Below, in pieces: positions 3 through 49,508 of a stretch of 64,000 nucleotides of DNA. The translations under genes were made by a program, and so were the position numbers. How positions within the stretch are numbered: position 1 is the stretch's first letter; every line of letters starts with the position of its first letter. The stretch covers positions 312,418,001-312,482,000 of the forward strand of contig CM097882.1 in NCBI GenBank assembly GCA_044892505.1. Direction: 5' to 3'. This stretch comes from Schmidtea nova. Lineage: Eukaryota. The notes under the pieces were generated by a model, which saw only the letters and a program-made list of their open reading frames with translations, was not told where the DNA came from and searched no databases.

Positions 3-1898
3 ATAATTATTAAAAATAATAAAAAATCTGTTAAAATTATAGAACCTAATAAAACAACTAAACAGAAGTATGATAAATTTGAATTTAAAAATCTGGTTCG
101 TATTTTAACGAAAAGGGAACGCCAGAAAATCTTGAATGCCTTCCCTGCTTTAATACAACTAATTAAAAAGAAAGAATCACAGAGTAAATATTTTGAAATT
201 AATAAATTTCTTTCGAGCAAAGATTTTAATGTGAATCACTTGAATTTAATTAATTTTGATTATTTTTTCTATAGAAATTGTAATCTTTGTGTATCTTTAA
301 AATTGAACAACGCTCCTGTCATTTCATCAGCACCAAAACCTGTTGTTTTAAAATCTATTAAATTAATTGACCATAATATCGTCAAAATAAATTCTGAAAT
401 CCCTGACTTTGTTCGAGCTCCAATGTCAATTCGAAGATTTTTATTCAATCTTTCGCACGATCTTTCAAACACTGTTTCCATCAAGGATGAGAAACACAGG
501 GGAAATAAAATAAATAACATTCTTACTTCAATGAAACATAAACAACAATTACCAGATTATTTAATAAAATCAAACATTAAATACGAAAATGGTGAGTTCT
601 TATTATTAGATTTGACTAACGATAAAATCAAATTGAACGACGATAATAACTTGATAAAATCAAATTTTTCTGAACTTACTAGAAGTCAGATTAAAAATCT
701 TTACTATTCTTATCCTTCTCTTAAGGAAGTTTGTTTCGTTGAAAATCTTGAAACAAGATCATCATCCGTTAGTAAAATTATCGAATCTTTAAAGTTAATT
801 AATGAATTTCCAAAAAATATCATTTTTAAAGAGGGTAAATTTTATCAGTCTGATAAAAGAACAATCTCACCTAGTAGTTCTCCTGACATAATGTTCAACC
901 TAGGTCTTTTTAATTTGGCTAGTATGAGTAGAAAAGATTGTGAATTAAAATCCATTTTAGAGAAGACTGGTTGTGACTTTAAAATAGTTGAAATAATATT
1001 CTACCTCAACTATTTAGGCTTGACTCAATCTTTAGAATTTTGCAAAAATCAAACTTATTCCGATTATGTGAGGAATTACGTCTGTAATTGCTGCTTGATA
1101 AACTCACTCTGTAGTATTGCTGATGTTGATTCGCTTTCATCTGAAGATTTTGAGGGTTGGGCGACCGAAATTGTTCAGAAAATCCCAGTTTCTTCCTATT
1201 ACTTCAATAGCTGCCAGGAAAAGCTTTTAAAGCTGAAGCAATGGGACATTTCAACTAAAATCAAAAGAATCCATAACGTTATTTCACCTGAAATAATATC
1301 TTATTTAAATAACTTTCTTGACTCTGTAGACGTAAAATTTCCATCTAAGTCTCAACAACATAATATTCTAATTAAATTAATGAAAGCTATCAATGACATT
1401 AAAATTTTTGATGACATACACGGAAATAAAGCAAAAAGACTTGTTTACTTTTTGCTAAGAGATGCCAAGAAATATTTGAATAAAAATCAACGATTCAGAT
1501 TATTTGAATCGAGCAATAAATATTGCACTTCAGAGATGGAGAATATAATTTCAGTAATAATTGAGAACCTTACCAAAGTTACTGACCATGAAGTTACTAC
1601 TCCTGAAATCACAGTTGAAGAAACGCCAATTGAAATAACTTGTGATCCTGAACCTATCGTCTTGATTAAGGAAATAAACTGTTTAAAATGTAACAATATC
1701 ATCGAAAAATGCATTCTTGTTAGAGATGGAACAAACGTCAACATCTGTGAAAGCTGTCTATTTGACGCAATTACCTTTGAAAAGCCGATTCCTGAAGCTA
1801 CTAATTCGGATATCGAAGAAAATATAGAAACAAATTGTAAGAAATCTTGTCCAAGACCTAGAAAAACAGACAAGAAAACATCAACCAAAGCAAAATGA
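3..1898 (+). CDS. ORF1 of copy 1, 5'-partial (open from the window edge; the track's start at 132 is an internal TTG)
   Basis: Collinear with ORF1 of copy 2 at offset 8781; ends at TGA 1896-1898. Confidence 0.9.
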   Translation: MIIKNNKKSVKIIEPNKTTKQKYDKFEFKNLVRILTKRERQKILNAFPALIQLIKKKESQSKYFEINKFLSSKDFNVNHLNLINFDYFFYRNCNLCVSLKLNNAPVISSAPKPVVLKSIKLIDHNIVKINSEIPDFVRAPMSIRRFLFNLSHDLSNTVSIKDEKHRGNKINNILTSMKHKQQLPDYLIKSNIKYENGEFLLLDLTNDKIKLNDDNNLIKSNFSELTRSQIKNLYYSYPSLKEVCFVENLETRSSSVSKIIESLKLINEFPKNIIFKEGKFYQSDKRTISPSSSPDIMFNLGLFNLASMSRKDCELKSILEKTGCDFKIVEIIFYLNYLGLTQSLEFCKNQTYSDYVRNYVCNCCLINSLCSIADVDSLSSEDFEGWATEIVQKIPVSSYYFNSCQEKLLKLKQWDISTKIKRIHNVISPEIISYLNNFLDSVDVKFPSKSQQHNILIKLMKAINDIKIFDDIHGNKAKRLVYFLLRDAKKYLNKNQRFRLFESSNKYCTSEMENIISVIIENLTKVTDHEVTTPEITVEETPIEITCDPEPIVLIKEINCLKCNNIIEKCILVRDGTNVNICESCLFDAITFEKPIPEATNSDIEENIETNCKKSCPRPRKTDKKTSTKAK

Positions 1899-1964
1899 AG
1901 ATGTGTGCCTGCATCAGCTCAATCGTCTGCCATTCCCTCTAATGAGACTGATGCAGAGAGCACA
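1896..1964 (+). promoter_or_regulatory. Candidate UGA readthrough signal (stop + stem-loop), copy 1
   Basis: TGA, 5-nt spacer AGATG, then TGTGC-CTGCATCAG-CTCA (1904-1921) pairing with TGAG-a-CTGATGCAG-aga-GCACA (1943-1964). Confidence 0.65.
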
Positions 1965-4900
1965 ACTAAAAATAATATTTCAACTATCGACAATCGTGAT
2001 CCTGAAGTGTGGTTTTCTGATAATGATATTGATTGGTATCTTGAAAACCACATTGATAATCCAATGCATGGATATATTAAATGCTTTATAGTAAATATCA
2101 TCTGTTCTAACATCACAGAAGATATTGTTGAAATTCCACCATCTATTAGCAATGCTGAAATTGTATTTTGTCCACTCAACATTAACAATTCGCACTGGAT
2201 TCTTTTTGTTTATAGTAAGAAAATGTTATCTTCTTACTTTATTGACCCAATCCTTGCAAACAGACAAAAGCCAATCAATAAACAAATGGCTCAGAGAATT
2301 AACCTAAAACTGAATAGATTTTTTAATCTAAATATATCTGTGTCCCGACATCCACACAAACATCTTGAATATCAAAATAACAGCTTTGATTGTGGCCCAT
2401 TTACGTGTGCTTATGCTGTGATTATCAGTAAAGATTTGAACAGCTTTCCAAATGGGTTCATAGAGAAAATTCGTACCAGTGTGCATGAAAATCAAAATCG
2501 TATGCAAATAACCGAATCCACCTTATTCGCTGGTACTAACTCCAAGATGGACATGACCAAAATAAATATCAAGAAAGCCCTTGCAAAAAAGAAAGTCATC
2601 ACCAACACCTCAGATATGACCAAAGTATTGAACACTCAAAAACCGTGTGTGTCATCAATAATTAGTAAATATTACGAAAGTAATTCTAAAATAACAGTCT
2701 TATCTGCCGAACTAACTTTAAACCTAATTGCACAAAATACCTCCTTCATAGCTGATAATGTCACTTTCAAGCAGTTCAAAGGAATCGATCATGTTATAAG
2801 TATCATTCCTAAATTTAACGATTGGTGTCTCTTTGTCTATTCGAATAAACTTGACAGGAGCTACATGTTCGACTTCAATTATCGAAACATTGATGAAAGG
2901 CTAATTGAAATTGGTGAAAAGATAACTGAATATCTGAATCAATTCACTCTTGTTTCTAAAATAAAATTCACACCTCATCATAGAATTTCTCATCCAACAT
3001 TTCATTCTTACGATGATCAATATTTTGCAAGTTCTTTTATTGTATTTTTTGAGAAACTTGTCTTTGAAAGAATACTGGACAATGATAAGGTTTATGACTC
3101 ATTAAGTGCTCTAAAATATCAGTCTTGTAAAGATCTTTCTCCTAGCTTAAGTTTCATTAATGGTAAAATATCCGACAAAATTATTGAGGAATATTTTGCT
3201 AGCCTAAACTTATCGACCAAATATATTCTTCTAAACACAACAATGTGTACTGCGCTTTCAGATGATTGCACTGAATACTTGAAAGACTTTGTAAACATTG
3301 AGTGCATGATGAAGGCTACTATAATCTTTGTAATCATTTCTCCTCCAAGAGCCAACGACTTGCTCATGGTTATTGATTACGACGCTGATGAGCACTATTT
3401 ATTAAGCCCAGTCACTAATGACTTGTTCGTTATGACTGAAGGATTCTGCTATAAATTACTAATTAAAATTAATGAGATTAGAGAGAGCACAGGTCGTTCC
3501 TTGAAATCGCGTAATTGTCGACATGACGTTAAAGGTTCTGGCTTATTTAGTAGGTTATTAATCTGTGCCTTTATTAAATATTATGCATTTGACCGATCTC
3601 TAGAAAATATCAATCTTCATGAAATTGGCAAAATTATCTACTCACTTGTGCCATTAGTTGATAAAAATGATAATGCTGAGGAAGAAAGACGACTAAAATC
3701 AAAAGCTGTAAACTCTTTAAAACTAAATTTAAAACAGCGAATAGAAAAAGCCAATAATCTTATAATTTCACTTGAACACGCCAGTATTGATGAAATCATA
3801 AGTGGCATTCTTTCAAATATTCCTCGTCTTAAAGATTTGAACACCGATCACATTCGTACACCATATTTAGGTACTAAAGTAGAAAAAGCTAGAAAATTCA
3901 AAAATTCCACTGAATTTCTGTCAAACATGAAAAAGACTGTGTATAGGATTTTGGGTAACAACACAGAATCAATTGCACCTCCTTTTCAGGAAATTATTGA
4001 CACTTTCAGTCATCCTGATACATTACCTAGAAATTGGGAAAACATCTTTAAATTCACTAAGAGTTCTAAATTTAGTCTTGAATTAAATCCAATGACACCT
4101 AAAGAAATCCTTTCAAGTCTTTGCAAAGCTGACAACACTTCTCCAGGTCTTGATAATGTTTGTTATAAAGATCTTTTGCTATTAGACCCTGAATGTAAAT
4201 TGCTAGCTTTTCTGTACAATAAAATCCTAAAATTAGACATTATTCCTACAAGTTGGAAATCATTTAAAACCATACTAATCCCTAAACCAGATAAAAATGG
4301 CCAATATCATAAAATATATTCTTGGCGACCAATTGCCTTATTATCTGTCATTTACAAAGTCTTCGCTTCAGTTTTGGCAAATCGTCTAAGCTTATGGATA
4401 AGAAATAATTCCATGTTACACATTGGCCAAAAGGGTGGTTCGGAGTACGAAGGATGTATTGAACACAACTCTATTCTTTCTGCTATCGTCGAACATTCAA
4501 AATACAGCAAGTCTTCACCTTTAACAATAGCTTGGCTAGACATCAAAGATGCCTTCGGAAGTGTTCCACATGACTACATGTGGACACTGTTAAAACACAT
4601 AAATGTTAGTGATAGGTTTGTAGGAATTTTAAAACTGCTCTATACTGATACAAGCTCGTTTTATTGTTGCAATAAAATGCAGACACCGGATATTCCAATA
4701 AAGAAAGGAGTTAAACAAGGTTGTCCGATCTCAATGATATTGTTTGCAATAGCTATTAACCCAGTACTTGAGTCTATTAATCTATCAAACGTTAATCCTT
4801 TTACGATTGGAACATCTCCGGTACAGGTGTTGGCTTATGCGGATGATATCGCACTTATCGCGACAAATACCTCTGATCTGCAAATACTCATAAACGTTGC

Positions 4901-6515
4901 TGTAAACACCGCTAAAACAATTGGATTTGAATATCGTCCAGAAAAGTGCGCTTATATGCAATACCCTAAAATAGAAACTGTAAGCGAGATTTCTGTCAAC
5001 AACGTTCTTATAAAAAAGATTGCAACAAATGAATTTTACCAATACTTGGGAGTACCAATAGGTGACAATAATGACCAAAGTCCCTATGAAATTCTAAGCA
5101 AAGTAATTGAAGACACAAAGAAAATAGCAAATTCTGATCTTTACGGCTGGCAAAAACTTAAAGCGTATAAGGTCTTTCTGCATTCTCGCTTGATTTTTCC
5201 ATTTAGAACTAGGGAAATCAAAACAAGTTCTTTAGCTGATTCGAGTAAAAATTCAAAATTAAATGTAAATAATACGAGTATTTTGAGGAGTCATCTTAGA
5301 AAAATATTGCACTTGCCACACTACTCTGAGATTAGCTATTTTTATAATTCTACTGAAAACGGCGGTGCAGGCTGCATAGACTTACTTGACGAGTATCATA
5401 CACAGACAATCGTGTACTTTTTCCGCTTGTTAACATCAACGTGCGAATATTCGAAAAAGATAAATACTGACTCGCTTTTATTTGTCACAAGTCCGAGACT
5501 CGGAATCAAAAATCCAGTTCTTAAACAAAGTTTAGAATGGATAAATGGAAAAGACAGCAAGAAAAACAACAGTGGTTGCAAAACTCGATTTTATCGGTTG
5601 CGATCATCCATTGCTTACTTTTCTAAAGTTCACAACATTAAATTGTTATTTGAAACAGTGAAAGGGAATCCTTCTATCCGGATAACCACTACACTTAAGG
5701 GAACACGTATATTATTACCAACATTAAGAAAAGCCTTGTCAATGATTTTACATTCAGCTCTCCAGGATTCGTATCTCGAGAAATGGGAGAATAGCAATCA
5801 TAATAATCTGCTTGTATCTGCGATTAAACTCTGTCCACTTGTCAACAAGCTTATTTTCCGCAGTGATTTGACAGAATTTGAATGGAGATTCGTCCATCGA
5901 GCAAGAACGAATACATTATCAATATTTGCGAAGCCATATAAAACTGGCGAAAATCGTCTTTGTCGTAGATGTAAGCTTGAAGACGAGACTTTATCACACG
6001 TTCTTCAAACTTGTAAAATGAACAAATCTTTGGCAACTAGTCGACATAACGCTTGCTTAGAAAAAATAAAAAGCGAGTTGAAAGATCCAAACTTGTTAGT
6101 TGTTGCGGATCATAAATGTTCCCTAGTACCGACATCAACTGAACGCGTTGATTTAATAATAACCAATAATGATAAAAAGACCATATTATTGGTAGACATG
6201 AAATGCCCAATCGATTCGGTGCCCAACTTTGACTTGGCTGATAAAAAAAACATAGAAAAGTATGATAAACTAAAATCGGAAATTAAAATAGCCAAACCCG
6301 ATTATAAAGTTGAGTTGTTTACCTGCATCATAGGCTCATTAGGATCCATTGAAATTAAAACACCTGATCTTTTAGTAAAAATGGGCGTAAAAGAAAATAA
6401 AGTAAAACGTCTGATGAAAGAGTGTGCAATTAGCAATATTGCGCACTCGGCCAAAATTTGGTACTTTCATACCAATGGCTTTCTTCCAGATAATATAAGA
6501 CAAACTTTTAAATAA
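1905..6515 (+). CDS. ORF2: Ulp1-like protease(s) + reverse transcriptase + CCHC + restriction-like endonuclease, copy 1 (track start is GTG; in frame with ORF1)
   Basis: SHW(H97)..FID(D114)..QNNSFDCG(Q157,C163); WRPIALL, LDIKDAFGSVPH, GVKQGCP, YADD(978-981), YQYLG; CRRC-x8-H-x4-C(1353-1370), RHN, RVD..DMK. Confidence 0.95.
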   Translation: MPASAQSSAIPSNETDAESTTKNNISTIDNRDPEVWFSDNDIDWYLENHIDNPMHGYIKCFIVNIICSNITEDIVEIPPSISNAEIVFCPLNINNSHWILFVYSKKMLSSYFIDPILANRQKPINKQMAQRINLKLNRFFNLNISVSRHPHKHLEYQNNSFDCGPFTCAYAVIISKDLNSFPNGFIEKIRTSVHENQNRMQITESTLFAGTNSKMDMTKINIKKALAKKKVITNTSDMTKVLNTQKPCVSSIISKYYESNSKITVLSAELTLNLIAQNTSFIADNVTFKQFKGIDHVISIIPKFNDWCLFVYSNKLDRSYMFDFNYRNIDERLIEIGEKITEYLNQFTLVSKIKFTPHHRISHPTFHSYDDQYFASSFIVFFEKLVFERILDNDKVYDSLSALKYQSCKDLSPSLSFINGKISDKIIEEYFASLNLSTKYILLNTTMCTALSDDCTEYLKDFVNIECMMKATIIFVIISPPRANDLLMVIDYDADEHYLLSPVTNDLFVMTEGFCYKLLIKINEIRESTGRSLKSRNCRHDVKGSGLFSRLLICAFIKYYAFDRSLENINLHEIGKIIYSLVPLVDKNDNAEEERRLKSKAVNSLKLNLKQRIEKANNLIISLEHASIDEIISGILSNIPRLKDLNTDHIRTPYLGTKVEKARKFKNSTEFLSNMKKTVYRILGNNTESIAPPFQEIIDTFSHPDTLPRNWENIFKFTKSSKFSLELNPMTPKEILSSLCKADNTSPGLDNVCYKDLLLLDPECKLLAFLYNKILKLDIIPTSWKSFKTILIPKPDKNGQYHKIYSWRPIALLSVIYKVFASVLANRLSLWIRNNSMLHIGQKGGSEYEGCIEHNSILSAIVEHSKYSKSSPLTIAWLDIKDAFGSVPHDYMWTLLKHINVSDRFVGILKLLYTDTSSFYCCNKMQTPDIPIKKGVKQGCPISMILFAIAINPVLESINLSNVNPFTIGTSPVQVLAYADDIALIATNTSDLQILINVAVNTAKTIGFEYRPEKCAYMQYPKIETVSEISVNNVLIKKIATNEFYQYLGVPIGDNNDQSPYEILSKVIEDTKKIANSDLYGWQKLKAYKVFLHSRLIFPFRTREIKTSSLADSSKNSKLNVNNTSILRSHLRKILHLPHYSEISYFYNSTENGGAGCIDLLDEYHTQTIVYFFRLLTSTCEYSKKINTDSLLFVTSPRLGIKNPVLKQSLEWINGKDSKKNNSGCKTRFYRLRSSIAYFSKVHNIKLLFETVKGNPSIRITTTLKGTRILLPTLRKALSMILHSALQDSYLEKWENSNHNNLLVSAIKLCPLVNKLIFRSDLTEFEWRFVHRARTNTLSIFAKPYKTGENRLCRRCKLEDETLSHVLQTCKMNKSLATSRHNACLEKIKSELKDPNLLVVADHKCSLVPTSTERVDLIITNNDKKTILLVDMKCPIDSVPNFDLADKKNIEKYDKLKSEIKIAKPDYKVELFTCIIGSLGSIEIKTPDLLVKMGVKENKVKRLMKECAISNIAHSAKIWYFHTNGFLPDNIRQTFK

Positions 6516-6870
6516 ATAATTATATATATATATAAATATTTGCTTTTTAAACTCTGTAAATAAAAATTAAAGTAAATATTTTGTAAAGTAATTTTTGTAT
6601 TAAATATCCAATCTTTTTAATCTGATAAATTGTCTTTGAGAGTTATTAAATTGGGAGACCAAGTATTCTGCAACGTATGTCACTTATTCTAGACTTATCA
6701 ACTTCAAAAGAATACAGTCGCAAAGCTGGATGACGAAATCCAAAGAACCAGAAACTTCCATTCAGATTGAACAATTATATTTTGACTGTGATTGTTTAGG
6801 GACTAATCCATGTTGATTAGATAATCTGTAAAAAAAATATGTCAAACTTGTTATATTTAATAAATGTTTA
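6516..6870 (+). other. 355-nt 3' UTR of the element (same in all copies; 352 nt in copy 5), AATAAA at 6859-6864, no poly(A) tail
   Basis: Lies between the ORF2 TAA and the tRNA junction; repeated at each copy. Confidence 0.9.
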
Positions 6871-6925
6871 TTATCACGTCTGCCTAACACGCAGAAGGTC
6901 CCCGGTTCGATCCCGGGTCGAACCA
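6871..6925 (+). pseudogene. 5'-truncated tRNA-Val(AAC), nt 19-73, disrupted by element copy 1
   Basis: TTATCACG...TCGAACCA directly after the element end; nt 1-18 absent. Confidence 0.95.
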
Positions 6926-7105
6926 AATTTTTCTCAATTCATTATTTGACTTTTATTATATTTGCAACTCTTTTTTTAATTCATAACGCAATTTTGTTGT
7001 TGAATTCTCTACTTTGTACATAAATTTTATTCAAGTGAATTCAGTACATTTTGTCAAGGTAATTCGAAAATCAAACATGCACAACAATTGTTAGTTGAAA
7101 CTGTC

Positions 7106-7178
7106 GGTTCGATGGTGTAGCGGTTATCACGTCTGCCTAACACGCAGAAGGTCCCCGGTTCGATCCCGGGTCGAACCA
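7106..7178 (+). tRNA. trnV: tRNA-Val(AAC)
   Basis: Acceptor GGTTCGA/TCGAACC, anticodon arm TCTGC-CTAACAC-GCAGA, T arm CCCGG-TTCGATC-CCGGG, A73; A34 (inosine-type) anticodon indicates a eukaryote. Confidence 0.97.
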
Positions 7179-7180
7179 AA

Positions 7181-7185
7181 TTTTT
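7181..7185 (+). terminator. Pol III terminator T5, 2 nt after the discriminator base (present after every tRNA unit; a T7 tract follows ~45 nt later)
   Basis: GAACCA-AA-TTTTT; CTCTTTTTTTAA further downstream. Confidence 0.8.
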
Positions 7186-7358
7186 CTCAATTCATTATTT
7201 GACTTTTATTATATTTGCAACTCTTTTTTTAATTCATAACGCAATTTTGTTGGTGAATTCTCTACTTTGTACATAAATTTTATTCAAGTGAATTCAGTAC
7301 ATTTTGTCAAGGTAATTCGAAAATCAAACATGCACAACAATTGTTAGTTGAAACTGTC

Positions 7359-7431
7359 GGTTCGATGGTGTAGCGGTTATCACGTCTGCCTAACACGCAG
7401 AAGGTCCCCGGTTCGATCCCGGGTCGAACCA
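7359..7431 (+). tRNA. trnV: tRNA-Val(AAC)
   Basis: Identical to 7106-7178. Confidence 0.97.
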
Positions 7432-7611
7432 AATTTTTCTCAATTCATTATTTGACTTTTATTATATTTGCAACTCTTTTTTTAATTCATAACGCAATTT
7501 TGTTGTTGAATTCTCTACTTTGTACATAAATTTTATTCAAGTGAATTCAGTACATTTTGTCAAGGTAATTCGAAAATCAAACATGCACAACAATTGTTAG
7601 TTGAAACTGTC

Positions 7612-7684
7612 GGTTCGATGGTGTAGCGGTTATCACGTCTGCCTAACACGCAGAAGGTCCCCGGTTCGATCCCGGGTCGAACCA
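7612..7684 (+). tRNA. trnV: tRNA-Val(AAC)
   Basis: Identical to 7106-7178. Confidence 0.97.
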
Positions 7685-7864
7685 AATTTTTCTCAATTCA
7701 TTATTTGACTTTTATTATATTTGCAACTCTTTTTTTAATTCATAACGCAATTTTGTTGTTGAATTCTCTACTTTGTACATAAATTTTATTCAAGTGAATT
7801 CAGTACATTTTGTCAAGGTAATTCGAAAATCAAACATGCACAACAATTGTTAGTTGAAACTGTC

Positions 7865-7937
7865 GGTTCGATGGTGTAGCGGTTATCACGTCTGCCTAAC
7901 ACGCAGAAGGTCCCCGGTTCGATCCCGGGTCGAACCA
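7865..7937 (+). tRNA. trnV: tRNA-Val(AAC)
   Basis: Identical to 7106-7178. Confidence 0.97.
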
Positions 7938-8045
7938 AATTTTTCTCAATTCATTATTTGACTTTTATTATATTTGCAACTCTTTTTTTAAGTGTTGATA
8001 TATATATTGTAAATTTTAACGATTGATAAATTCTTTCAAGGTTCG

Positions 8046-10679
8046 ATGACTCAATCACCTGCTGCTCAGTCAACTGCTGCTGATGTAATGACTCAGTCTA
8101 TTGCAAATCAGTCAACTGTGACGAAGCAATATGAATTAGAAAACATTCTCAAATATCAAATTTCCAGTTTGCAATGTTTTCAATCGATTTTGGATTATTT
8201 TTCTCAACTAAATGGTGGAAATCTCGCTACTGCCTCAGTTCTATCTGATGCGAATGCAAGTCAACGGAGTTCTTTCGATCAAGGATCTAAAATTTCTCCA
8301 AACCAATCTGATAATATGCCACTTTCTTATGCTGATATTGAGACTAAATTCACTAAATCAAAGGATTTACTTATTGTCAAGCGCCTGGATTCATTGGAGT
8401 CTCAATTTATGAATATGGCTGAAAAGTTAGATTATTTGGTTTCTTTGTTTAATGGCTCTGTTGATGATTTATCAGATTTTCCTAAAGTAAATGAAAATAA
8501 TTTAAATAATAATCCTTTCAATAAAAATAAAGTTTTTGATATCAAAGATAAATTAATTGTAAATAATGTAGTTTTAGATAAATCAAATATTTCAGAATTT
8601 ATTGAAAATAATATTGCTAAAATTCCTAATAGTTTAATTGATGTAAATAATAAAATGTGTAATTCAAATAATAAATTTCTAAATAACCCTAATAAAGAGA
8701 ATGTTAAACATTTTAATAATCCCAAAGATACATCTTCAATTGATTTGACTAACGATAAAATTATGCCAAATGAAAACATAGAAATAATTATTAAAAATAA
8801 TAAAAAATCTGTTAAAATTATAGAACTTTATAAAACAACTAAACAGAAGTATGATAAATTTGAATTTAAAAGTCTGGTTCGTATTTTAACGAAAAGGGAA
8901 CGCCAGAAAATCTTGAATGCCTTCCCTGCTTTAATACAACTAATTAAAAAGAAAGAATCACAGAGTAAATATTTTGAAATTAATAAATTTCTTTCGAGCA
9001 AAGATTTTAATGTGAATCACTTGAATTTAATTAATTTTGATTATTTTTTCTATAGAAATTGTAATCTTTGTGTATCTTTAAAATTGAACAACGCTCCTGT
9101 CATTTCATCAGCACCAAAACCTGTTGTTTTAAAAACTATTAAATTAATTGACCATAATATCGTCAAAATAAATTCTGAAATCCCTGACTTTGTTCGAGCT
9201 CCAATGTCAATTCGAAGATTTTTATTCAATCTTTCGCACGATCTTTCAAACACTGTTTCCATCAAGGATGAGAAACACAGGGGAAATAAAATAAATAACA
9301 TTCTTACTTCAATGAAACATAAACAACAATTACCAGATTATTTAATAAAATCAAACATTAAATACGAAAATGGTGAGTTCTTATTATTAGATTTGACTAA
9401 CGATAAAATCAAATTGAACGACGATAATAACTTGATAAAATCAAATTTTTCTGAACTTACTAGAAGTCAGATTAAAAATCTTTACCATTCTTATCCTTCT
9501 CTTAAGGAAGTTTGTTTCGTTGAAAATCTTGAAACAAGATCATCATCCGTTAGTAAAATTATCGAATCTTTAAAGTTAATTAATGAATTTCCAAAAAATA
9601 TCATTTTTAAAGAGGGTAAATTTTATCAGTCTGATAAAAGAACAATCTCACCTAGTAGTTCTCCTGACATAATGTTCAACCTTGGTCTTTTTAATTTAGC
9701 TAGTATGAGTAGAAAAGATTGTGAATTAAAATCCATTTTAGAGAAGACTGGTTGTGACTTTAAAATAGTTGAAATAATATTCTACCTCAACTATTTAGGC
9801 TTGACTCAATCTTTAGAATTTTGCAAAAATCAAACTTATTCTGATTATGTGAGGAATTACGTCTGCAATTGCTGCTTGATAAACTCACTCTGTAGTATTG
9901 CTGATGTTGATTCGCTTTCATCTGAAGATTTTGAGGGTTGGGCGACCGAAATTGTTCAGAAAATCCCAGTTTCTTCCTATTACTTCAATAGCTGCCAGGA
10001 AAAGCTTTTAAAGCTGAAGCAATGGGACATTTCAACTAAAATCAAAAGAATCCATAACGTTATTTCACCTGAAATAATATCTTATTTAAATAACTTTCTT
10101 GACTCTGTAGACGTAAAATTTCCATCTAAGTCTCAACAACATAATATTCTAATTAAATTAATGAAAGCTATCAATGACATTAAAATTTTTGATGACATAC
10201 ACGGAAATAAAGCAAAAAGACTTGTTTACTTTTTGCTAAGAGATGCCAAGAAATATTTGAATAAAAATCAACGATTCAGATTATTTGAATCGAGCAATAA
10301 ATATTGCACTTTAGAGATGGAGAATATAATTTCAGTAATAATTGAGAACCTTACCAAAGTTACTGACCATGAAGTTACTACTCCTGAAATCACAGTTGAA
10401 GAAACGCCAATTGAAATAACTTGTGATCCTGAACCTATCGTCTTGATTAAGGAAATAAACTGTTTAAAATGCAACAATATCATCGAAAAATGCATTCTTG
10501 TTAGAGATGGAACAAACGTCAACATCTGTGAAAGCTGTCTATTTGACGCAATTACCTTTGAAAAGCCGATTCCTGAAGCTACTAATTCGGATATCGAAGA
10601 AAATATAGAAACAAATTGTAAGAAATCTTGTCCAAGACCTAGAAAAACAGACAAGAAAACATCAACCAAAGCAAAATGA
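8046..10679 (+). CDS. ORF1 (877 aa), unknown family; putative coiled coil, Asn-rich tract, C4 zinc finger, basic C-tail
   Basis: Long ORF kept in all copies; CLKC-x18-CESC at 10461-10538. Confidence 0.92.
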   Translation: MTQSPAAQSTAADVMTQSIANQSTVTKQYELENILKYQISSLQCFQSILDYFSQLNGGNLATASVLSDANASQRSSFDQGSKISPNQSDNMPLSYADIETKFTKSKDLLIVKRLDSLESQFMNMAEKLDYLVSLFNGSVDDLSDFPKVNENNLNNNPFNKNKVFDIKDKLIVNNVVLDKSNISEFIENNIAKIPNSLIDVNNKMCNSNNKFLNNPNKENVKHFNNPKDTSSIDLTNDKIMPNENIEIIIKNNKKSVKIIELYKTTKQKYDKFEFKSLVRILTKRERQKILNAFPALIQLIKKKESQSKYFEINKFLSSKDFNVNHLNLINFDYFFYRNCNLCVSLKLNNAPVISSAPKPVVLKTIKLIDHNIVKINSEIPDFVRAPMSIRRFLFNLSHDLSNTVSIKDEKHRGNKINNILTSMKHKQQLPDYLIKSNIKYENGEFLLLDLTNDKIKLNDDNNLIKSNFSELTRSQIKNLYHSYPSLKEVCFVENLETRSSSVSKIIESLKLINEFPKNIIFKEGKFYQSDKRTISPSSSPDIMFNLGLFNLASMSRKDCELKSILEKTGCDFKIVEIIFYLNYLGLTQSLEFCKNQTYSDYVRNYVCNCCLINSLCSIADVDSLSSEDFEGWATEIVQKIPVSSYYFNSCQEKLLKLKQWDISTKIKRIHNVISPEIISYLNNFLDSVDVKFPSKSQQHNILIKLMKAINDIKIFDDIHGNKAKRLVYFLLRDAKKYLNKNQRFRLFESSNKYCTLEMENIISVIIENLTKVTDHEVTTPEITVEETPIEITCDPEPIVLIKEINCLKCNNIIEKCILVRDGTNVNICESCLFDAITFEKPIPEATNSDIEENIETNCKKSCPRPRKTDKKTSTKAK

Positions 10680-10745
10680 AGATGTGTGCCTGCATCAGCT
10701 CAATCGTCTGCCATTCCCTCTAATGAGACTGATGCAGAGAGCACA
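10677..10745 (+). promoter_or_regulatory. Candidate UGA readthrough signal, copy 2
   Basis: Same stop + stem-loop as 1896-1964. Confidence 0.65.
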
Positions 10746-13700
10746 ACTAAAAATAATATTTCAACTATCGACAATCGTGATCCTGAAGTGTGGTTTTCTG
10801 ATAATGATATTGATTGGTATCTTGAAAACCACATTGATAATCCAATGCATGGATATATTAAATGCTTTATAGTAAATATCATCTGTTCTAACATCACAGA
10901 AGATATTGTTGAAATTCCACCATCTATTAGCAATGCTGAAATTGTATTTTGTCCACTCAACATTAACAATTCGCACTGGATTCTTTTTGTTTATAGTAAG
11001 AAAATGTTATCTTCTTACTTTATTGACCCAATCCTTGCAAACAGACAAAAGCCAATCAATAAACAAATGGCTCAGAGAATTAATCTAAAACTGAATAGAT
11101 TTTTTAATCTAAATATATCTGTGTCCCGACATCCACACAAACATCTTGAATATCAGAATAACAGCTTTGACTGTGGCCCATTTACGTGTGCTTATGCTGT
11201 GATTATCAGTAAAGATTTGAACAGCTTTCCAAATGGGTTCATAGAGAAAATTCGTACCAGTGTGCATGAAAATCAAAATCGTATGCAAATAACCGAATCC
11301 ACCTTATTCGCTGGTACTAACTCCAAGATGGACATGACCAAAATAAATATCAAGAAAGCCCTTGCAAAAAAGAAAGTCATCACCAACACCTCAGATATGA
11401 CCAAAGTATTGAACACTCAAAAACCGTGTGTGTCATCAATAATTAGTAAATATTACGAAAGTAATTCTAAAATAACAGTCTTATCTGCCGAACTAACTTT
11501 AAACCTAATTGCACAAAATACCTCCTTCATAGCTGATAATGTCACTTTCAAGCAGTTCAAAGGAATCGATCATGTTATAAGTATCATTCCTAAATTTAAC
11601 GATTGGTGTCTCTTTGTCTATTCGAATAAACTTGACAGGAGCTACATGTTCGACTTCAATTATCGAAACATTGATGAAAGGCTAATTGAAATTGGTGAAA
11701 AGATAACTGAATATCTGAATCAATTCACTCTTGTTTCTAAAATAAAATTCACACCTCATCATAGAATTTCTCATCCAACATTTCATTCTTACGATGATCA
11801 ATATTTTGCAAGTTCTTTTATTGTATTTTTTGAGAAACTTGTCTTTGAAAGAATACTGGACAATGATAAGGTTTATGACTCATTAAGTGCTCTAAAATAT
11901 CAGTCTTGTAAAGATCTTTCTCCTAGCCTAAGTTTCATTAATGGTAAAATATCCGACAAAATTATTGAGGAATATTTTGCTAGCCTAAACTTATCGACCA
12001 AATATATTCTTCTAAACACAACAATGTGTACTGCGCTTTCAGATGATTGCACTGAATACTTGAAAGACTTTGTAAACATTGAGTGCATGATGAAGGCTAC
12101 TATAATCTTTGTAATCATTTCTCCTCCAAGAGCCAACGACTTGCTCATGGTTATTGATTACGACGCTGATGAGCACTATTTATTAAGCCCAGTCACTAAT
12201 GACTTGTTCGTTATGACTGAAGGATTCTGCTATAAATTACTAATTAAAATTAATGAGATTAGAGAGAGCACAGGACGTTCCTTGAAATCGCGTAATTGTC
12301 GACATGACGTTAAAGGTTCTGGCTTATTTAGTAGGTTATTAATCTGTGCCTTTATTAAATATTATGCATTTGACCGATCTCTAGAAAATATCAATCTTCA
12401 TGAAATTGGCAAAATTATCTACTCACTTGTGCCATTGGTTGATAAAAATGATAATGCTGAGGAAGAAAGACGACTAAAATCAAAAGCTGTAAACTCTTTA
12501 AAACTAAATTTAAAACAGCGAATAGAAAAAGCCAATAATCTTATAATTTCACTTGAACACGCCAGTATTGATGAAATCATAAGTGGCATTCTTTCAAATA
12601 TTCCTCGTCTTAAAGATTTGAACACCGATCACATTCGTACACCATATTTAGGTACTAAAATAGAAAAAGCTAGAAAATTCAAAAATTCCACTGAGTTTCT
12701 GTCAAACATGAAAAAGACTGTGTATAGGATTTTGGGTAACAACACAGAATCAATTGCACCTCCTTATCAGGAAATTATTGACACTTTCAGTCATCCTGAT
12801 ACATTACCTAGAAATTGGGAAAACATCTTAAAATTCACTAAGAGTTCTAAATATAGTCTTGAATTAAATCCAATGACACCTAAAGAAATCCTTTCAAGTC
12901 TTTGCAAAGCTGACAACACTTCTCCAGGTCTTGATAATGTTTGTTATAAAGATCTTTTGTTATTAGACCCTGAATGTAAATTGCTAGCTTTTCTGTACAA
13001 TAAAATCCTAAAATTAGACATTATTCCTACAAGTTGGAAATCATTTAAAACGATACTAATCCCCAAACCAGATAAAAATGGCCAATATCATAAAATATAT
13101 TCTTGGCGACCAATTGCCTTATTATCTGTCATTTACAAAGTCTTCGCTTCAGTTTTGGCAAATCGTCTAAGCTTATGGATAAGAAATAATTCCATGTTAC
13201 ACATTGGCCAAAAGGGTGGTTCGGAGTACGAAGGATGTATTGAACACAACTCTATTCTTTCTGCTATCGTCGAACATTCAAAATACAGCAAGTCTTCACC
13301 TTTAACGATAGCTTGGCTAGACATCAAAGATGCCTTCGGAAGTGTTCCACATGACTACATGTGGACACTGTTAAAACACATAAATGTTAGTGATAGGTTT
13401 GTAGGAATTTTAAAACTGCTCTATACTGATACAAGCTCGTTTTACTGTTGCAATAAAATGCAGACACCGGATATTCCAATAAAGAAAGGAGTTAAACAAG
13501 GTTGTCCGATCTCAATGATATTGTTTGCAATAGCTATTAACCCAGTACTTGAGTCTATTAATCTATCAAACGTTAATCCTTTTACGATTGGAACATCTCC
13601 GGTACAGGTGTTGGCTTATGCGGATGATATCGCACTTATCGCGACAAATACCTCTGATCTGCAAATACTCATAAACGTTGCTGTAAACACCGCTAAAACA

Positions 13701-15296
13701 ATTGGATTTGAATATCGTCCAGAAAAGTGCGCTTATATGCAATTCCCTAAAATAGAAACTGTAAGCGAGATTTCTGTCAACAACGTTCTTATCAAAAAGA
13801 TTGCAACAAATGAATTTTACCAATACTTGGGAGTACCAATAGGTGACAATAATGATCAAAGTCCCTATGAAATTCTAAGCAAAGTAATTGAAGACACAAA
13901 GAAAATAGCAAATTCTGATCTTTACGGCTGGCAAAAACTTAAAGCGTATAAGGTCTTTCTGCATTCTCGCTTGATTTTTCCATTTAGAACTAGGGAAATC
14001 AAAACAAGTTCTTTAGCTGATTCGAGTAAAAATTCAAAATTAAATGTAAATAATACGAGTATTTTGAGGAGTCATCTTAGAAAAATATTGCACTTGCCAC
14101 ACTACTCTGAGATTAGCTATTTTTATAATTCTACTGAAAACGGCGGTGCAGGCTGCATAGACTTACTTGACGAGTATCATACACAGACAATCGTGTACTT
14201 TTTCCGTTTGTTAACATCAACGTGCGAATATTCGAAAAAGATAAATACTGACTCGCTTTTATTTGTCACAAGTCCGAGACTCGGAATCAAAAATCCAGTT
14301 CTTAAACAAAGTTTAGAATGGATAAATGGAAAAGAGAGCAAGAAAAACAACAGTGGTTGCAAAACTCGATTTTATCGGTTGCGATCATCCATTGCTTACT
14401 TTTCTAAAGTTCACAACATTAAATTGTTATTTGAAACAGTGAAAGGGAATCCTTCTATCCGTATAACCACTACACTTAAGGGAACACGTATATTATTACC
14501 AACATTAAGAAAAGCCTTGTCAATGATTTTACATTCAGCTCTCCAGGATTCGTATCTCGAGAAATGGGAGAATAGCAATCATAATAATCTGCTTGTATCT
14601 GCGATAAAACTCTGTCCACTTGTCAACAAGCTTATTTTCCGCAGTGATTTGACAGAATTTGAATGGAGATTCGTCCATCGAGCAAGAACGAATACATTAT
14701 CAATATTTGCGAAGCCATATAAAACTGGCGAAAATCGTCTTTGTCGTAGATGTAAGCTTGAAGACGAGACTTTATCACACGTTCTTCAAACTTGTAAAAT
14801 GAACAAATCTTTGGCAACTAGTCGACATAACGCTTGCTTAGAAAAAATAAAAAGCGAGTTGAAAGATCCAAACTTGTTAGTTGTTGCGGATCATAAATGT
14901 TCCCTAGTACCGACATCAACTGAACGCGTTGATTTAATAATAACCAATAATGATAAAAAGACCATATTATTGGTAGACATGAAATGCCCAATCGATTCGG
15001 TGCCCAACTTTGACTTGGCTGATAAAAAAAACATAGAAAAGTATGATAAACTAAAATCAGAAATTAAAATAGCCAAACCCGATTATAAAGTTGAGTTGTT
15101 TACCTGCATCATAGGCTCATTAGGATCCATTGAAATTAAAACACCTGATCTTTTAGTAAAAATGGGAGTAAAAGAAAATAAAGTAAAACGTCTGATGAAA
15201 GAGTGTGCAATTAGCAATATTGCGCACTCGGCCAAAATTTGGTACTTTCATACCAATGGCTTTCTTCCAGATAATATAAGACAAACTTGTAAATAA
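10686..15296 (+). CDS. ORF2 protease-RT-CCHC-RLE, copy 2
   Basis: Same motifs as copy 1; 7 aa differences. Confidence 0.95.
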   Translation: MPASAQSSAIPSNETDAESTTKNNISTIDNRDPEVWFSDNDIDWYLENHIDNPMHGYIKCFIVNIICSNITEDIVEIPPSISNAEIVFCPLNINNSHWILFVYSKKMLSSYFIDPILANRQKPINKQMAQRINLKLNRFFNLNISVSRHPHKHLEYQNNSFDCGPFTCAYAVIISKDLNSFPNGFIEKIRTSVHENQNRMQITESTLFAGTNSKMDMTKINIKKALAKKKVITNTSDMTKVLNTQKPCVSSIISKYYESNSKITVLSAELTLNLIAQNTSFIADNVTFKQFKGIDHVISIIPKFNDWCLFVYSNKLDRSYMFDFNYRNIDERLIEIGEKITEYLNQFTLVSKIKFTPHHRISHPTFHSYDDQYFASSFIVFFEKLVFERILDNDKVYDSLSALKYQSCKDLSPSLSFINGKISDKIIEEYFASLNLSTKYILLNTTMCTALSDDCTEYLKDFVNIECMMKATIIFVIISPPRANDLLMVIDYDADEHYLLSPVTNDLFVMTEGFCYKLLIKINEIRESTGRSLKSRNCRHDVKGSGLFSRLLICAFIKYYAFDRSLENINLHEIGKIIYSLVPLVDKNDNAEEERRLKSKAVNSLKLNLKQRIEKANNLIISLEHASIDEIISGILSNIPRLKDLNTDHIRTPYLGTKIEKARKFKNSTEFLSNMKKTVYRILGNNTESIAPPYQEIIDTFSHPDTLPRNWENILKFTKSSKYSLELNPMTPKEILSSLCKADNTSPGLDNVCYKDLLLLDPECKLLAFLYNKILKLDIIPTSWKSFKTILIPKPDKNGQYHKIYSWRPIALLSVIYKVFASVLANRLSLWIRNNSMLHIGQKGGSEYEGCIEHNSILSAIVEHSKYSKSSPLTIAWLDIKDAFGSVPHDYMWTLLKHINVSDRFVGILKLLYTDTSSFYCCNKMQTPDIPIKKGVKQGCPISMILFAIAINPVLESINLSNVNPFTIGTSPVQVLAYADDIALIATNTSDLQILINVAVNTAKTIGFEYRPEKCAYMQFPKIETVSEISVNNVLIKKIATNEFYQYLGVPIGDNNDQSPYEILSKVIEDTKKIANSDLYGWQKLKAYKVFLHSRLIFPFRTREIKTSSLADSSKNSKLNVNNTSILRSHLRKILHLPHYSEISYFYNSTENGGAGCIDLLDEYHTQTIVYFFRLLTSTCEYSKKINTDSLLFVTSPRLGIKNPVLKQSLEWINGKESKKNNSGCKTRFYRLRSSIAYFSKVHNIKLLFETVKGNPSIRITTTLKGTRILLPTLRKALSMILHSALQDSYLEKWENSNHNNLLVSAIKLCPLVNKLIFRSDLTEFEWRFVHRARTNTLSIFAKPYKTGENRLCRRCKLEDETLSHVLQTCKMNKSLATSRHNACLEKIKSELKDPNLLVVADHKCSLVPTSTERVDLIITNNDKKTILLVDMKCPIDSVPNFDLADKKNIEKYDKLKSEIKIAKPDYKVELFTCIIGSLGSIEIKTPDLLVKMGVKENKVKRLMKECAISNIAHSAKIWYFHTNGFLPDNIRQTCK

Positions 15297-48749: not shown

Positions 48750-48822
48750 GGTTCGATGGTGTAGCGGTTATCACGTCTGCCTAACACGCAGAAGGTCCCC
48801 GGTTCGATCCCGGGTCGAACCA
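48750..48822 (+). tRNA. trnV: tRNA-Val(AAC)
   Basis: Identical unit. Confidence 0.97.
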
Positions 48823-49002
48823 AATTTTTCTCAATTCATTATTTGACTTTTATTATATTTGCAACTCTTTTTTTAATTCATAACGCAATTTTGTTGTTGA
48901 ATTCTCTACTTTGTACATAAATTTTATTCAAGTGAATTCAGTACATTTTGTCAAGGTAATTCGAAAATCAAACATGCACAACAATTGTTAGTTGAAACTG
49001 TC

Positions 49003-49075
49003 GGTTCGATGGTGTAGCGGTTATCACGTCTGCCTAACACGCAGAAGGTCCCCGGTTCGATCCCGGGTCGAACCA
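49003..49075 (+). tRNA. trnV: tRNA-Val(AAC)
   Basis: Identical unit. Confidence 0.97.
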
Positions 49076-49255
49076 AATTTTTCTCAATTCATTATTTGAC
49101 TTTTATTATATTTGCAACTCTTTTTTTAATTCATAACGCAATTTTGTTGTTGAATTCTCTACTTTGTACATAAATTTTATTCAAGTGAATTCAGTACATT
49201 TTGTCAAGGTAATTCGAAAATCAAACATGCACAACAATTGTTAGTTGAAACTGTC

Positions 49256-49328
49256 GGTTCGATGGTGTAGCGGTTATCACGTCTGCCTAACACGCAGAAG
49301 GTCCCCGGTTCGATCCCGGGTCGAACTA
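49256..49328 (+). tRNA. trnV: tRNA-Val(AAC) variant C72T (G1:U72 wobble)
   Basis: Ends TCGAACTA instead of TCGAACCA (49327). Confidence 0.9.
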
Positions 49329-49508
49329 AATTTTTCTCAATTCATTATTTGACTTTTATTATATTTGCAACTCTTTTTTTAATTCATAACGCAATTTTGT
49401 TGTTGAATTCTCTACTTTGTACATAAATTTTATTCAAGTGAATTCAGTACATTTTGTCAAGGTAATTCGAAAATCAAACATGCACAACAATTGTTAGTTG
49501 AAACTGTC

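What the first reader, a model, noticed from the sequence alone, without database searches (positions are those of the whole stretch)
1896..1964. ORF1 and ORF2 are in frame, separated by one UGA with a stem-loop 5 nt downstream: candidate programmed stop-codon readthrough
Seen: ...AAA TGA AGA TGT GTG CCT... puts ORF2 in the ORF1 frame in all 7 copies where the junction is visible (in copy 3 relative to the 3' ORF1 piece). The track's ORF2 start is GTG, and the first in-frame ATG (2064, Met54) would cut off the WFSDNDIDWYL start of the protease domain. The five nearer ATGs (1895, 1901, 1942, 1951, 2023) are all out of frame. A GC-rich hairpin in otherwise AT-rich DNA starts at +6: TGTGC/GCACA, CTGCATCAG/CTGATGCAG (9 perfect bp), CTCA/TGAG, 18 bp in total. 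Established: 3' RNA structures stimulate readthrough in MLV gag-pol, alphaviruses and Drosophila headcase. Inference: leaky UGA gives abundant ORF1p plus a rare 2416-aa fusion (8046-15296 in copy 2). I know of no RLE-clade LINE shown to use this strategy.
Basis: partly seen in the sequence, partly recalled or inferred. Interest (0 to 1): 0.9.

Follow-up and report, generated by a model that had tools for sequence, protein, structure and literature searches.

The report
Conserved leaky UGA stop in a LINE

Summary
All 7 copies carry an identical junction: ORF1, an in-frame UGA, a 5-6 nt spacer, then an 18-bp bulged hairpin (-25.4 kcal/mol, z = -4.5).

I recovered DNA for 11 relatives whose ORF2 is about 27-55% identical.
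- All 11 have a single in-frame UGA between an upstream open frame and the Ulp1-protease/RT/RLE frame. That is 12/12 UGA, against 4/12 at ORF2's own stop.
- The base after the UGA is C in 10/12.
- The next codon is CGG or CUA in 6/12, the 'type II' viral readthrough motif. One relative has UGA-CUAGGC.
- The hairpin's 5' arm is the longest perfectly conserved nucleotide run in 4.5 kb of ORF2.
- Its 9-bp helix is intact in five lineages, with two compensatory double changes.
- Two further lineages build the same architecture from unrelated sequence.
- The two UGA-CUAG lineages have no hairpin.
- The protease begins before the first in-frame Met. In two relatives that Met lies after the whole catalytic triad.

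No SECIS, Rfam match or in-frame restart codon was found. I found no published case in LINEs. Nothing has been shown experimentally.

The parts
132..1895 (+). 3' part of ORF1 of copy 1. The complete ORF1 is 877 aa in copy 2, 8046-10676. It has no Pfam domain, a CxxC...CxxC motif and a basic C-terminal tail.
   Evidence: The ORF1 of L002 is 32% identical over 586 aa (E = 9e-70), so this is a conserved protein-coding frame.
1896..1898 (+). In-frame UGA separating ORF1 from the protease-RT-RLE frame; the proposed readthrough codon. The same codon lies at 10677, 19203, 27225, 35500, 43540 and 55462 in the other copies.
   Evidence: UGA sits at the equivalent junction in 11 of 11 relatives.
1899..1904 (+). 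Spacer AGAUGU between the stop and the conserved stem. The first codon, AGA (Arg), is CGG, CGA or AGA (all Arg) in six lineages.
1904..1964 (+). Bulged hairpin. The basal helix is (U)GUGC/GCAC(A), with a 3-nt 3' bulge AGA. The upper helix is 9 bp, CUGCAUCAG/CUGAUGCAG. The apical helix is CUCA/UGAG with a 21-nt loop. The same hairpin lies at TGA+8 to TGA+68 in each of the other six copies.
   Evidence: Searches show the arms are the most conserved nucleotides of ORF2, two compensatory pairs occur, and a covariance model finds the L011 junction at E = 1.5e-4.
1899..6515 (+). Readthrough frame (ORF2, 1538 codons after the stop, ends TAA). It holds a Ulp1-like cysteine protease (Pfam match at residues 81-179; the W-x-x-D motif at 2007-2018), a reverse transcriptase (residues 792-1051), a CCHC motif and a PD-(D/E)xK-like endonuclease at the C-terminus.
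2064..2066 (+). First in-frame AUG after the stop (codon 56 after UGA). It lies downstream of the start of the protease domain.
10677..10745 (+). UGA plus hairpin in copy 2, the intact reference copy (ORF1 8046-10679, ORF2 frame to 15296).

Best explanation
The element is a site-specific non-LTR retrotransposon with a restriction-like endonuclease, inserted in a tandem array of tRNA-Val genes.

**Proposed mechanism.**
1. Its mRNA is translated from the ORF1 AUG, and most ribosomes terminate at the UGA, giving ORF1p.
2. A minority decode the UGA with a near-cognate tRNA and continue in the same frame.
3. This makes an ORF1-protease-RT-endonuclease fusion of about 2416 aa.
4. The hairpin starting 5-6 nt after the UGA would sit at the ribosome's mRNA entry channel while the UGA is in the A site. 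There it would tip the competition between release factor and tRNA toward readthrough, as in 'type II' viral readthrough (UGA-CGG/CUA plus a 3' stem-loop).
5. The Ulp1-like protease, encoded immediately after the stop, may then process the fusion. The layout is analogous to gag-UAG-pro-pol of gammaretroviruses.

**What is shown.** The in-frame single UGA, its leaky contexts and the downstream structure are conserved across the family. The protease cannot be made from an in-frame AUG.

**What is inferred.** That readthrough occurs, that the hairpin stimulates it, the product ratio, and proteolytic processing.
For: 1. **Phase and stop identity.** 12 of 12 lineages (the window plus L001-L003, L009-L011, L013-L017) have an upstream open frame of 51 to more than 1100 codons in phase with the protease-RT frame. 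One UGA separates them. ORF2's own stop is TAA in 8/12 and UGA in 4/12, never followed by C.
2. **Context.** The +4 base is C in 10/12. The +1 codon is CGG (L002, L010, L011), CGA (L014), CUA (L003, L009, L013) or CUG (L015). L003 reads UGA-CUAGGC. UGA-CGG/CUA defines type II readthrough (PMC3542737). UGA-CUAG gives efficient readthrough in mammalian genes, and CUAGGC is the OPRL1 and Ross River/Getah sequence (PMC4132726).
3. **Structure.** In a 3-way codon alignment of 4545 nt (44% identical; 30% identity at synonymous third positions), the longest identical run is 13 nt and is the 5' arm. The 3' arm is a 10-nt run.
4. **Covariation.** The 9-bp helix is fully paired in five lineages. L010 carries U-A to C-G and L011 carries A-U to U-A, both at the cost of amino-acid changes. 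The bulge base varies freely.
5. **Same architecture from unrelated sequence.** L014 and L015 have a 6-nt spacer, a 3-bp base, a 3-nt 3' bulge and an upper stem of about 10 bp. L017 has a 26-bp hairpin 5 nt after the UGA, z = -4.3.
6. **Stability rank.** Junction windows rank among the most stable of each element: 2/709, 4/497, 0/639, 8/539 and 0/396 native windows are as stable.
7. **Trade-off.** The two UGA-CUAG lineages lack a hairpin.
8. **No AUG route.** The first in-frame Met is at codon 56 in the window, 217 in L001, 64 in L002, 94 in L010, 177 in L011, 68 in L013 and 81 in L014. The Ulp1 W-x-N-D motif and the invariant H97/D114/Q157/C163 lie at or before those positions.
9. **Phylogeny.** UGA lineages fall in three well-supported subclades of one clade. 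A relative with one uninterrupted 2421-aa ORF (L012) nests among them, so the fused protein is viable.
Against: - There are no expression, ribosome-profiling or peptide data. Everything is comparative.
- The window and L001 have UGA-A (AGA), not the favourable UGA-C.
- The spacer (5-6 nt) is shorter than the roughly 8 nt typical of viral type II/III signals.
- L016 (UGA-CAA) and L009 have only weak structures with non-significant z-scores. L016's upstream frame is only 51 codons, and L017 carries another in-frame stop later in ORF2, so some relatives may be decayed copies.
- Contigs are short and their hosts are unknown.
- Only relatives whose gene model started near the protease were looked up. 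More distant family members with other layouts (L004, L012: single ORF) exist.
- The tree was a quick search without bootstraps.
Confidence: 0.75

Rival explanations
1. Termination-reinitiation, or non-AUG initiation just after the UGA. Ribosomes stop at the UGA, and the hairpin holds the 40S subunit so that it restarts at a nearby codon (GUG at 1905). This would resemble the SART1 LINE, where a downstream structure supports stop-start coupling.
For: SART1 and L1 make ORF2 by termination-reinitiation, and SART1 needs a downstream structure (PMC5972666). A base A precedes the UGA in 8/12 lineages, giving AUGA. L009 has an in-frame AUG 2 codons after the stop, and L003 has one 12 codons after. 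A hairpin about 14 nt after a non-AUG codon can enhance initiation (PMC3542737).
Against: The AUG of AUGA is out of frame and opens a 15-codon ORF (read directly from the sequence). The GUG position is CUC in L011, GGG in L014 and GGC in L015, none a near-cognate start. Reinitiation does not need phase conservation, a UGA specifically, or a C/CGG/CUAG after the stop, yet all are conserved. The hairpin starts at the GUG itself, not about 14 nt after it.
Confidence: 0.1
2. The UGA is an ordinary terminator, and ORF2 is expressed in some other way (internal entry, a processed or subgenomic RNA). The conserved hairpin would serve another role, such as an RNA-binding or packaging site for the element's proteins or an RNA-processing signal.
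For: RLE elements such as R2 use structured RNA for protein binding and self-processing (established knowledge, not tested here). A conserved hairpin alone does not prove a translational role.
Against: The hairpin keeps a fixed 5-6 nt distance from the UGA even where its sequence is unrelated, and it is absent where the context is UGA-CUAG. No Rfam family, ribozymes included, matches at E <= 10. Phase, UGA identity and +4 C would be left unexplained. No in-frame AUG is available for the protease.
Confidence: 0.08
3. The UGA is recoded as selenocysteine, or the host reads UGA as a sense codon.
For: UGA followed 6 nt later by a hairpin resembles the selenocysteine redefinition element of SEPN1 (from memory, not checked here).
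Against: No SECIS was found in the window at gathering thresholds, nor in the 3' UTR at E <= 10. There is exactly one in-frame UGA per roughly 2400 codons, always at the same place, whereas each element has 15-25 UGG and 18-69 UGU/UGC codons. Four relatives also end ORF2 with UGA.
Confidence: 0.02
4. A recent inactivating nonsense mutation in a formerly single-ORF element, spread through the tRNA array by recombination, with a chance hairpin nearby.
For: The 7 copies are 99.5-99.97% identical and lie in one tandem array. NeSL and Utopia relatives usually have one ORF (PMC4640811). L012 and L004 are single-ORF.
Against: The same UGA at the same place occurs in 11 relatives from 10 other samples whose ORF2 is only 27-55% identical, with the flanking ORFs intact. 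The hairpin arms are conserved and covary.
Confidence: 0.01

Closest known systems
Type II programmed stop-codon readthrough of RNA viruses (alphavirus nsP3/nsP4, tobravirus and coltivirus; UGA-CGG or UGA-CUA plus an extended 3' stem-loop)
   Same: UGA is the recoded stop. CGG or CUA is the next codon in 6 of 12 lineages. A stem-loop follows a short spacer. The polymerase-containing part is made as a C-terminal extension of a more abundant upstream product.
   Different: The carrier is a nuclear LINE, not a virus. The spacer is 5-6 nt rather than about 8 nt. The window's own +1 codon is AGA, so the Arg is kept but the +4 C is lost. The stem is a bulged hairpin with a large coding loop of 16-48 nt. 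Readthrough has not been measured.
Gammaretrovirus gag-UAG-pro-pol readthrough (murine leukemia virus)
   Same: It is a retroelement. A structural or nucleic-acid-binding ORF comes first. One in-frame stop is followed at a short spacer by a stimulatory RNA structure. A protease is encoded immediately after the stop and RT follows.
   Different: The stop there is UAG with an H-type pseudoknot, not UGA with a hairpin. The protease there is aspartic, here Ulp1-like cysteine. The elements are unrelated in RT clade and integration mechanism (TPRT with an RLE here).
UGA-CUAG readthrough in cellular genes (OPRL1, OPRK1, AQP4, MAPK10, MDH1)
   Same: Relatives L003 and L013 have UGA-CUAG and no significant hairpin. 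L003 has the exact heptamer extension CUAGGC of OPRL1.
   Different: This applies to relatives, not to the window's copies, which rely on a hairpin. In those genes the extension is short, whereas here it is a polyprotein of more than 1300 aa.
NeSL / R5-LIN / Utopia group of RLE-type site-specific LINEs
   Same: It has RT plus a C-terminal CCHC and restriction-like endonuclease. It has an N-terminal Ulp1-like protease, as in nematode NeSL and Utopia-1_TSP. It inserts into a multicopy small-RNA gene. tRNA-gene-specific members are known: NeSL-1_TV and the planarian LIN15_SM and LIN25_SM.
   Different: Those families are described as encoding one protein. Here a long ORF1 is separated from the enzyme by a conserved UGA. 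Clade placement against reference NeSL, R5 or LIN sequences was not tested.
SART1 and L1 ORF2 translation by termination-reinitiation
   Same: It is a bicistronic LINE RNA. SART1 needs a structure downstream of the ORF1 stop.
   Different: There is no in-frame restart AUG at the junction. The ORFs are in phase, with a leaky UGA context conserved.

Membership tests
Programmed stop-codon readthrough, type II signal | The recoded stop is UGA | tested here: met
   UGA in the window and in 11/11 relatives. ORF2's own stops are mostly TAA.
Programmed stop-codon readthrough, type II signal | CGG or CUA immediately 3' of the stop | tested here: not met
   The window has AGA, as does L001. The feature is met in 6 relatives (CGG x3, CUA x3), and CGA and CUG occur in two more. 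It holds for the family, not for this copy.
Programmed stop-codon readthrough, type II signal | Stable 3' stem-loop beginning about 8 nt after the stop, conserved with covariation | tested here: met
   -25.4 kcal/mol, z = -4.5. Two compensatory pairs and no disrupted pair in the 9-bp helix across 5 lineages. The same architecture is seen in L014 and L015. The spacer is 5-6 nt, shorter than typical.
Programmed stop-codon readthrough, type II signal | The downstream frame is coding, in phase, and lacks its own start | tested here: met
   1538 open codons follow. The protease motif aligns to Ulp1 before the first Met. The first Met lies at codon 177 or 217 in two relatives.
Programmed stop-codon readthrough, type II signal | Measured readthrough product that depends on the signal | not testable with these tools
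   Needs reporter assays, ribosome profiling or mass spectrometry.
RLE-type (R2/NeSL group) non-LTR retrotransposon | LINE-type reverse transcriptase closest to R2-group proteins | tested here: met
   Pfam RVT_1 at E = 1.8e-29. The best PDB matches are R2 proteins, E = 2.9e-53, ahead of L1 ORF2p at 7e-24.
RLE-type (R2/NeSL group) non-LTR retrotransposon | C-terminal CCHC motif plus a PD-(D/E)xK restriction-like endonuclease; no APE domain | tested here: met
   A CCHC motif (CRRC...H...C) lies at ORF2 residue 1355, followed by ..RVDLII.. and ..VDMK... There is no Exo_endo_phos Pfam hit. This is a motif-level test only.
RLE-type (R2/NeSL group) non-LTR retrotransposon | Site-specific insertion into a repeated target | tested here: met
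   All copies lie in a 253-bp tRNA-Val(AAC) array, with the 3' junction in the tRNA D-loop. L002 ends in the D-arm of another tRNA.
NeSL clade specifically | RT phylogeny groups it with NeSL-1/R5/LIN/Utopia reference elements | not tested
The only support is the shared Ulp1 protease and the tRNA targets reported in PMC4640811.
SART1-type stop-start translational coupling | Overlapping or adjacent stop and in-frame AUG for ORF2 | tested here: not met
   The AUGA at 1895-1898 puts the AUG out of the ORF2 frame, opening a 15-codon ORF (read directly from the sequence). The first in-frame AUG is 56 codons downstream.
Eukaryotic selenocysteine recoding | SECIS element in the 3' UTR | tested here: not met
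   There is no SECIS hit in the whole window at gathering score or in 6480-6900 at E <= 10.

The most novel reading that the evidence does not exclude
Programmed UGA readthrough is the ancestral and obligatory way of making the protease-RT-endonuclease polyprotein in a whole clade of tRNA-gene-targeting, NeSL-like LINEs. The clade uses two interchangeable stimulators: a UGA-CUAG context, or a bulged hairpin 6 nt downstream. This would be a Gag-Pro-Pol-style stoichiometry device that evolved independently of retroviruses, and the first such recoding signal in non-LTR retrotransposons.
Probability: 0.65. Interest if true: 0.8.

Novelty: new variant of a known kind. Interest (0 to 1): 0.72.

Why it matters
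How LINEs translate their second ORF is a long-standing problem. The documented answers are termination-reinitiation (L1, SART1), 2A peptides, frameshifting, or a single ORF.

A family-wide, structure-assisted UGA readthrough would add a new strategy. It would also be a clear case of convergence between a non-LTR retrotransposon and both retroviruses and alphaviruses.

The family offers a natural series of stimulators on one homologous junction: context only, hairpin only, or both. That series is useful for dissecting how context and structure trade off in eukaryotic readthrough.

It also bears on RLE-type elements now being developed for site-specific gene insertion. It suggests that an accessory ORF1 protein, made in set excess over the enzyme, belongs to the biology of this clade.

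Tried and rejected
- **ORF1 homologue search.** The search for homologous proteins found nothing. ORF1 evolves too fast: 32% identity to L002, and no detectable similarity to L003's ORF1.
- **Metagenome scan.** With the ORF2 alignment it gave only one relevant locus, L004, a distant single-ORF element. The other hits had protease-only matches and were not used.
- **Exact-pattern scans for the hairpin.** Genome contigs and viral contigs gave 0 hits.
- **Rfam.** No family matches the junction. The 3' UTR gave only noise-level hits.
- **Alignment A2.** MAFFT misaligned the 3' arm of L011.
- **Alignment A4.** The covariance-model alignment also contains minus-strand matches of the near-palindromic stem. 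I therefore did not run the count of structure pairs on either alignment, and tabulated pairs directly instead.
- **Zorro3.** My recollection that Candida Zorro3 has a single in-frame UGA was wrong. The review describes four in-phase stops and an unclear mechanism.
- **NeSL-1 paper.** The original paper (PMC1460889) is not held, so I could not check its ORF structure.
- **Plant L1 elements.** I recall that some (Ta11/ATLN) have in-frame ORFs separated by one stop. I could not find this in the library, so it remains unverified.
- **Tree.** The first run timed out. The tree reported is a quick LG+G4 search.
- **Host organism.** Not identified.
Full report
**1. What is in the window**

The window is 32% G+C and holds seven copies of an element of about 8.3 kb. 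The copies sit in a tandem array of tRNA-Val(AAC) genes with a 253-bp unit; 34 tRNA genes are present.

Each full copy has two frames:
- an ORF1 of 877 aa with no Pfam match;
- a second frame of 1536-1538 codons with a Ulp1-type cysteine protease (Peptidase_C48) and a reverse transcriptase (RVT_1).

The best matches among solved structures are R2 retrotransposon proteins (E = 2.9e-53), well ahead of L1 ORF2p. The C-terminus carries a CCHC motif followed by a PD-(D/E)xK-like motif. No apurinic-endonuclease domain is present. This is therefore a site-specific LINE of the restriction-like-endonuclease type with a NeSL-like protease.

**2. The observation**

The junction string is identical in all seven copies. 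The TGA is in phase with both frames.

The RNA from 1896 to 1975 folds into the described hairpin at -25.4 kcal/mol. None of 200 dinucleotide shuffles is as stable (z = -4.5). Only 2 of 709 native 80-nt windows of the same element fold as well.

The segment PEVWFSDNDIDWYL, encoded 34 codons after the stop, aligns with the PRRWLNDTIIEFFM segment of yeast Ulp1. So the protease domain starts before the first in-frame Met.

The seven copies differ by only 0.03-0.5%. They do not count as independent evidence.

**3. Relatives**

Protein searches with ORF2 and look-ups of the encoding contigs gave DNA for 11 relatives that have a stop upstream of the protease. They come from ten different samples, and their ORF2 is about 27-55% identical to the window's.

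In every one, an upstream open frame of 51 to more than 1100 codons is in phase with the protease-RT frame, separated from it by exactly one stop. Most of these upstream frames run to the contig end. The stop is UGA in 12 of 12 lineages. The terminator of ORF2 itself is TAA in 8 and UGA in 4, and is never followed by C.

The base after the junction UGA is C in 10 of 12. The following codons are:

| Codon after UGA | Lineages |
|---|---|
| CGG | L002, L010, L011 |
| CGA | L014 |
| CUA | L003, L009, L013 |
| CUG | L015 |
| CUC | L017 |
| CAA | L016 |
| AGA | window, L001 |

UGA-CGG and UGA-CUA are the defining contexts of 'type II' viral readthrough. That signal usually also has a stem-loop about 8 nt downstream (PMC3542737). 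UGA-CUAG alone drives efficient readthrough in mammalian genes. L003 carries UGA-CUAGGC, the OPRL1 and Ross River/Getah sequence (PMC4132726).

**4. The hairpin is under selection as RNA**

I made a codon alignment of the window, L001 and L002 over 4545 nt. Three-way identity is 44%, and 30% at synonymous third positions. The longest perfectly conserved run in the whole frame is 13 nt and is the 5' arm. The 3' arm is a 10-nt run. The loop between them is unrelated in sequence.

Across five lineages (window, L001, L002, L010, L011) the 9-bp upper helix is fully paired. It carries two independent double substitutions: U-A to C-G in L010 and A-U to U-A in L011. Both change the encoded amino acids. 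The middle base of the 3-nt bulge takes all four values.

A covariance model built from four sequences finds the junction of L011, which was not in the model, at E = 1.5e-4.

More distant lineages show related structures:
- L014 and L015 have unrelated sequences there but the same architecture: a 6-nt spacer, a 3-bp base, a 3-nt 3' bulge, an upper stem of about 10 bp and a large loop.
- L017 has a 26-bp hairpin 5 nt after the stop, z = -4.3.
- L003 and L013, both UGA-CUAG, have no significant structure.
- L009 and L016 have only small hairpins.

So the family appears to combine context and structure in varying proportions.

**5. Why not a separate start for ORF2**

The first in-frame Met after the stop falls at these codons:

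| Lineage | Codon of first in-frame Met |
|---|---|
| window | 56 |
| L002 | 64 |
| L013 | 68 |
| L014 | 81 |
| L010 | 94 |
| L011 | 177 |
| L001 | 217 |

The invariant His97, Asp114, Gln157 and Cys163 of the protease lie before the last two of these positions.

The GUG that an ORF finder picks in the window is CUC, GGG or GGC in other lineages. The AUG of the AUGA overlap at 1895 is out of frame and opens a 15-codon ORF. This speaks against SART1-like or L1-like termination-reinitiation.

There is no SECIS. No Rfam family, ribozymes included, matches the junction. A sense reading of UGA by the host is excluded: there is a single UGA per roughly 2400 codons, always at the same place, among 15-25 UGG codons per element.

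**6. Phylogenetic spread**

In a quick maximum-likelihood tree of 34 proteins, the UGA-bearing elements fall in three well-supported subclades of one clade. The path lengths between them are 2-3 substitutions per site.

L012 has one uninterrupted ORF of 2421 aa. It comes from the same sample as L011 and nests among them. L004 (2794 aa, single ORF) is an outlier. NeSL and Utopia elements are described as single-ORF (PMC4640811).

The simplest reading has two parts:
- an ancestral single ORF acquired a leaky stop about 25-50 codons before the protease, early in this clade;
- the fused protein remains functional, as expected if it is the natural readthrough product.

In the third subclade (L015-L017), a C2H2-like zinc finger lies just upstream of the UGA. 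This is the kind of N-terminal DNA-binding motif of R2-group enzymes. It again suggests that the upstream frame belongs to the enzyme.

**7. Mechanism proposed**

Most ribosomes terminate at the UGA and release ORF1p. A fraction insert an amino acid and continue, giving an ORF1-protease-RT-endonuclease polyprotein. The hairpin, lying at the mRNA entry channel when the UGA is in the A site, raises that fraction. The protease may cut the polyprotein.

Sections 3-6 show what the sequences and their conservation establish. The occurrence and rate of readthrough, the role of the stem, and the processing step are all inferred.

Points against:
- the window's UGA-A context is less favourable than that of most relatives;
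- the spacer is short compared with viral signals;
- some relatives may be decayed copies;
- no experimental data exist.

**8. Novelty**

Full-text searches found no report of programmed readthrough in a non-LTR retrotransposon of any clade. Reviews list termination-reinitiation, 2A peptides and frameshifting for LINEs. A 2026 review of animal-virus readthrough does not mention retrotransposons.

The library covers open-access papers only, and the NeSL-1 paper could not be read.

I rate this a new variant of a known kind of recoding signal in a new carrier. The evidence is well supported comparatively and untested experimentally.

Noticed in passing
window 6873-8045 and the equivalent flanks of each copy; tRNA genes listed: The element is specific for a tandem array of tRNA-Val(AAC) genes with a 253-bp unit. 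The 3' junction lies in the D-loop, with tRNA sequence resuming at about position 19. The 5' junction lies about 52 nt downstream of the preceding tRNA, so about 146 bp of target seems to be missing at each insertion. A run of 19 uninterrupted units lies at 48750-53376.
   Followed up: partly
L002 6990-7005: The 51%-identical relative ends with the same 3' tail motif (..ttatatttaataaat..). It is then joined to ..AGTGGTAGAGC, which looks like the D-arm of a different tRNA. The family may have switched between tRNA gene targets. tRNA-specific NeSL relatives are reported from Trichomonas and planarians (PMC4640811).
   Followed up: partly
window 16574-19205 (copy 3) and 53506-55464 (copy 7): Copy 3 has ORF1 split into two overlapping pieces (344 and 546 aa), which indicates a frameshift. 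Copy 7 has a shorter ORF1 (652 aa). In copies 6 and 7 the distance from the upstream tRNA to the ORF1 ATG is 130 nt, against 109 nt in copies 4 and 5. ORF2 is intact (1536 aa) in all seven copies.
   Followed up: no
L012 128-7393: This relative has one uninterrupted 2421-aa ORF with the N-terminal region, protease, RT and RLE. It has no stop and no strong hairpin before the protease motif (SSKWFTDIDID at residue 1106). It comes from the same sample as the UGA-bearing L011 and nests among UGA lineages in the tree.
   Followed up: partly
L017 2877-2890: A second in-frame stop (TAA) interrupts ORF2 after residue 874, and the frame stays open beyond it to the contig end. This is probably a decayed copy.
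   Followed up: no
L015 about 520-580, L016 about 60-120, L017 about 100-160 (upstream of the UGA): In this subclade a C2H2-like zinc finger (for example CFCEH...HVKAVH) lies just upstream of the UGA. The window's ORF1 instead ends with a CxxC...CxxC motif and a basic tail.
   Followed up: no
window 16960-17529 and 33255-33824, minus strand: ORFs of 189 aa lie antisense to ORF1 in two copies. This is probably chance in AT-rich sequence.
   Followed up: no
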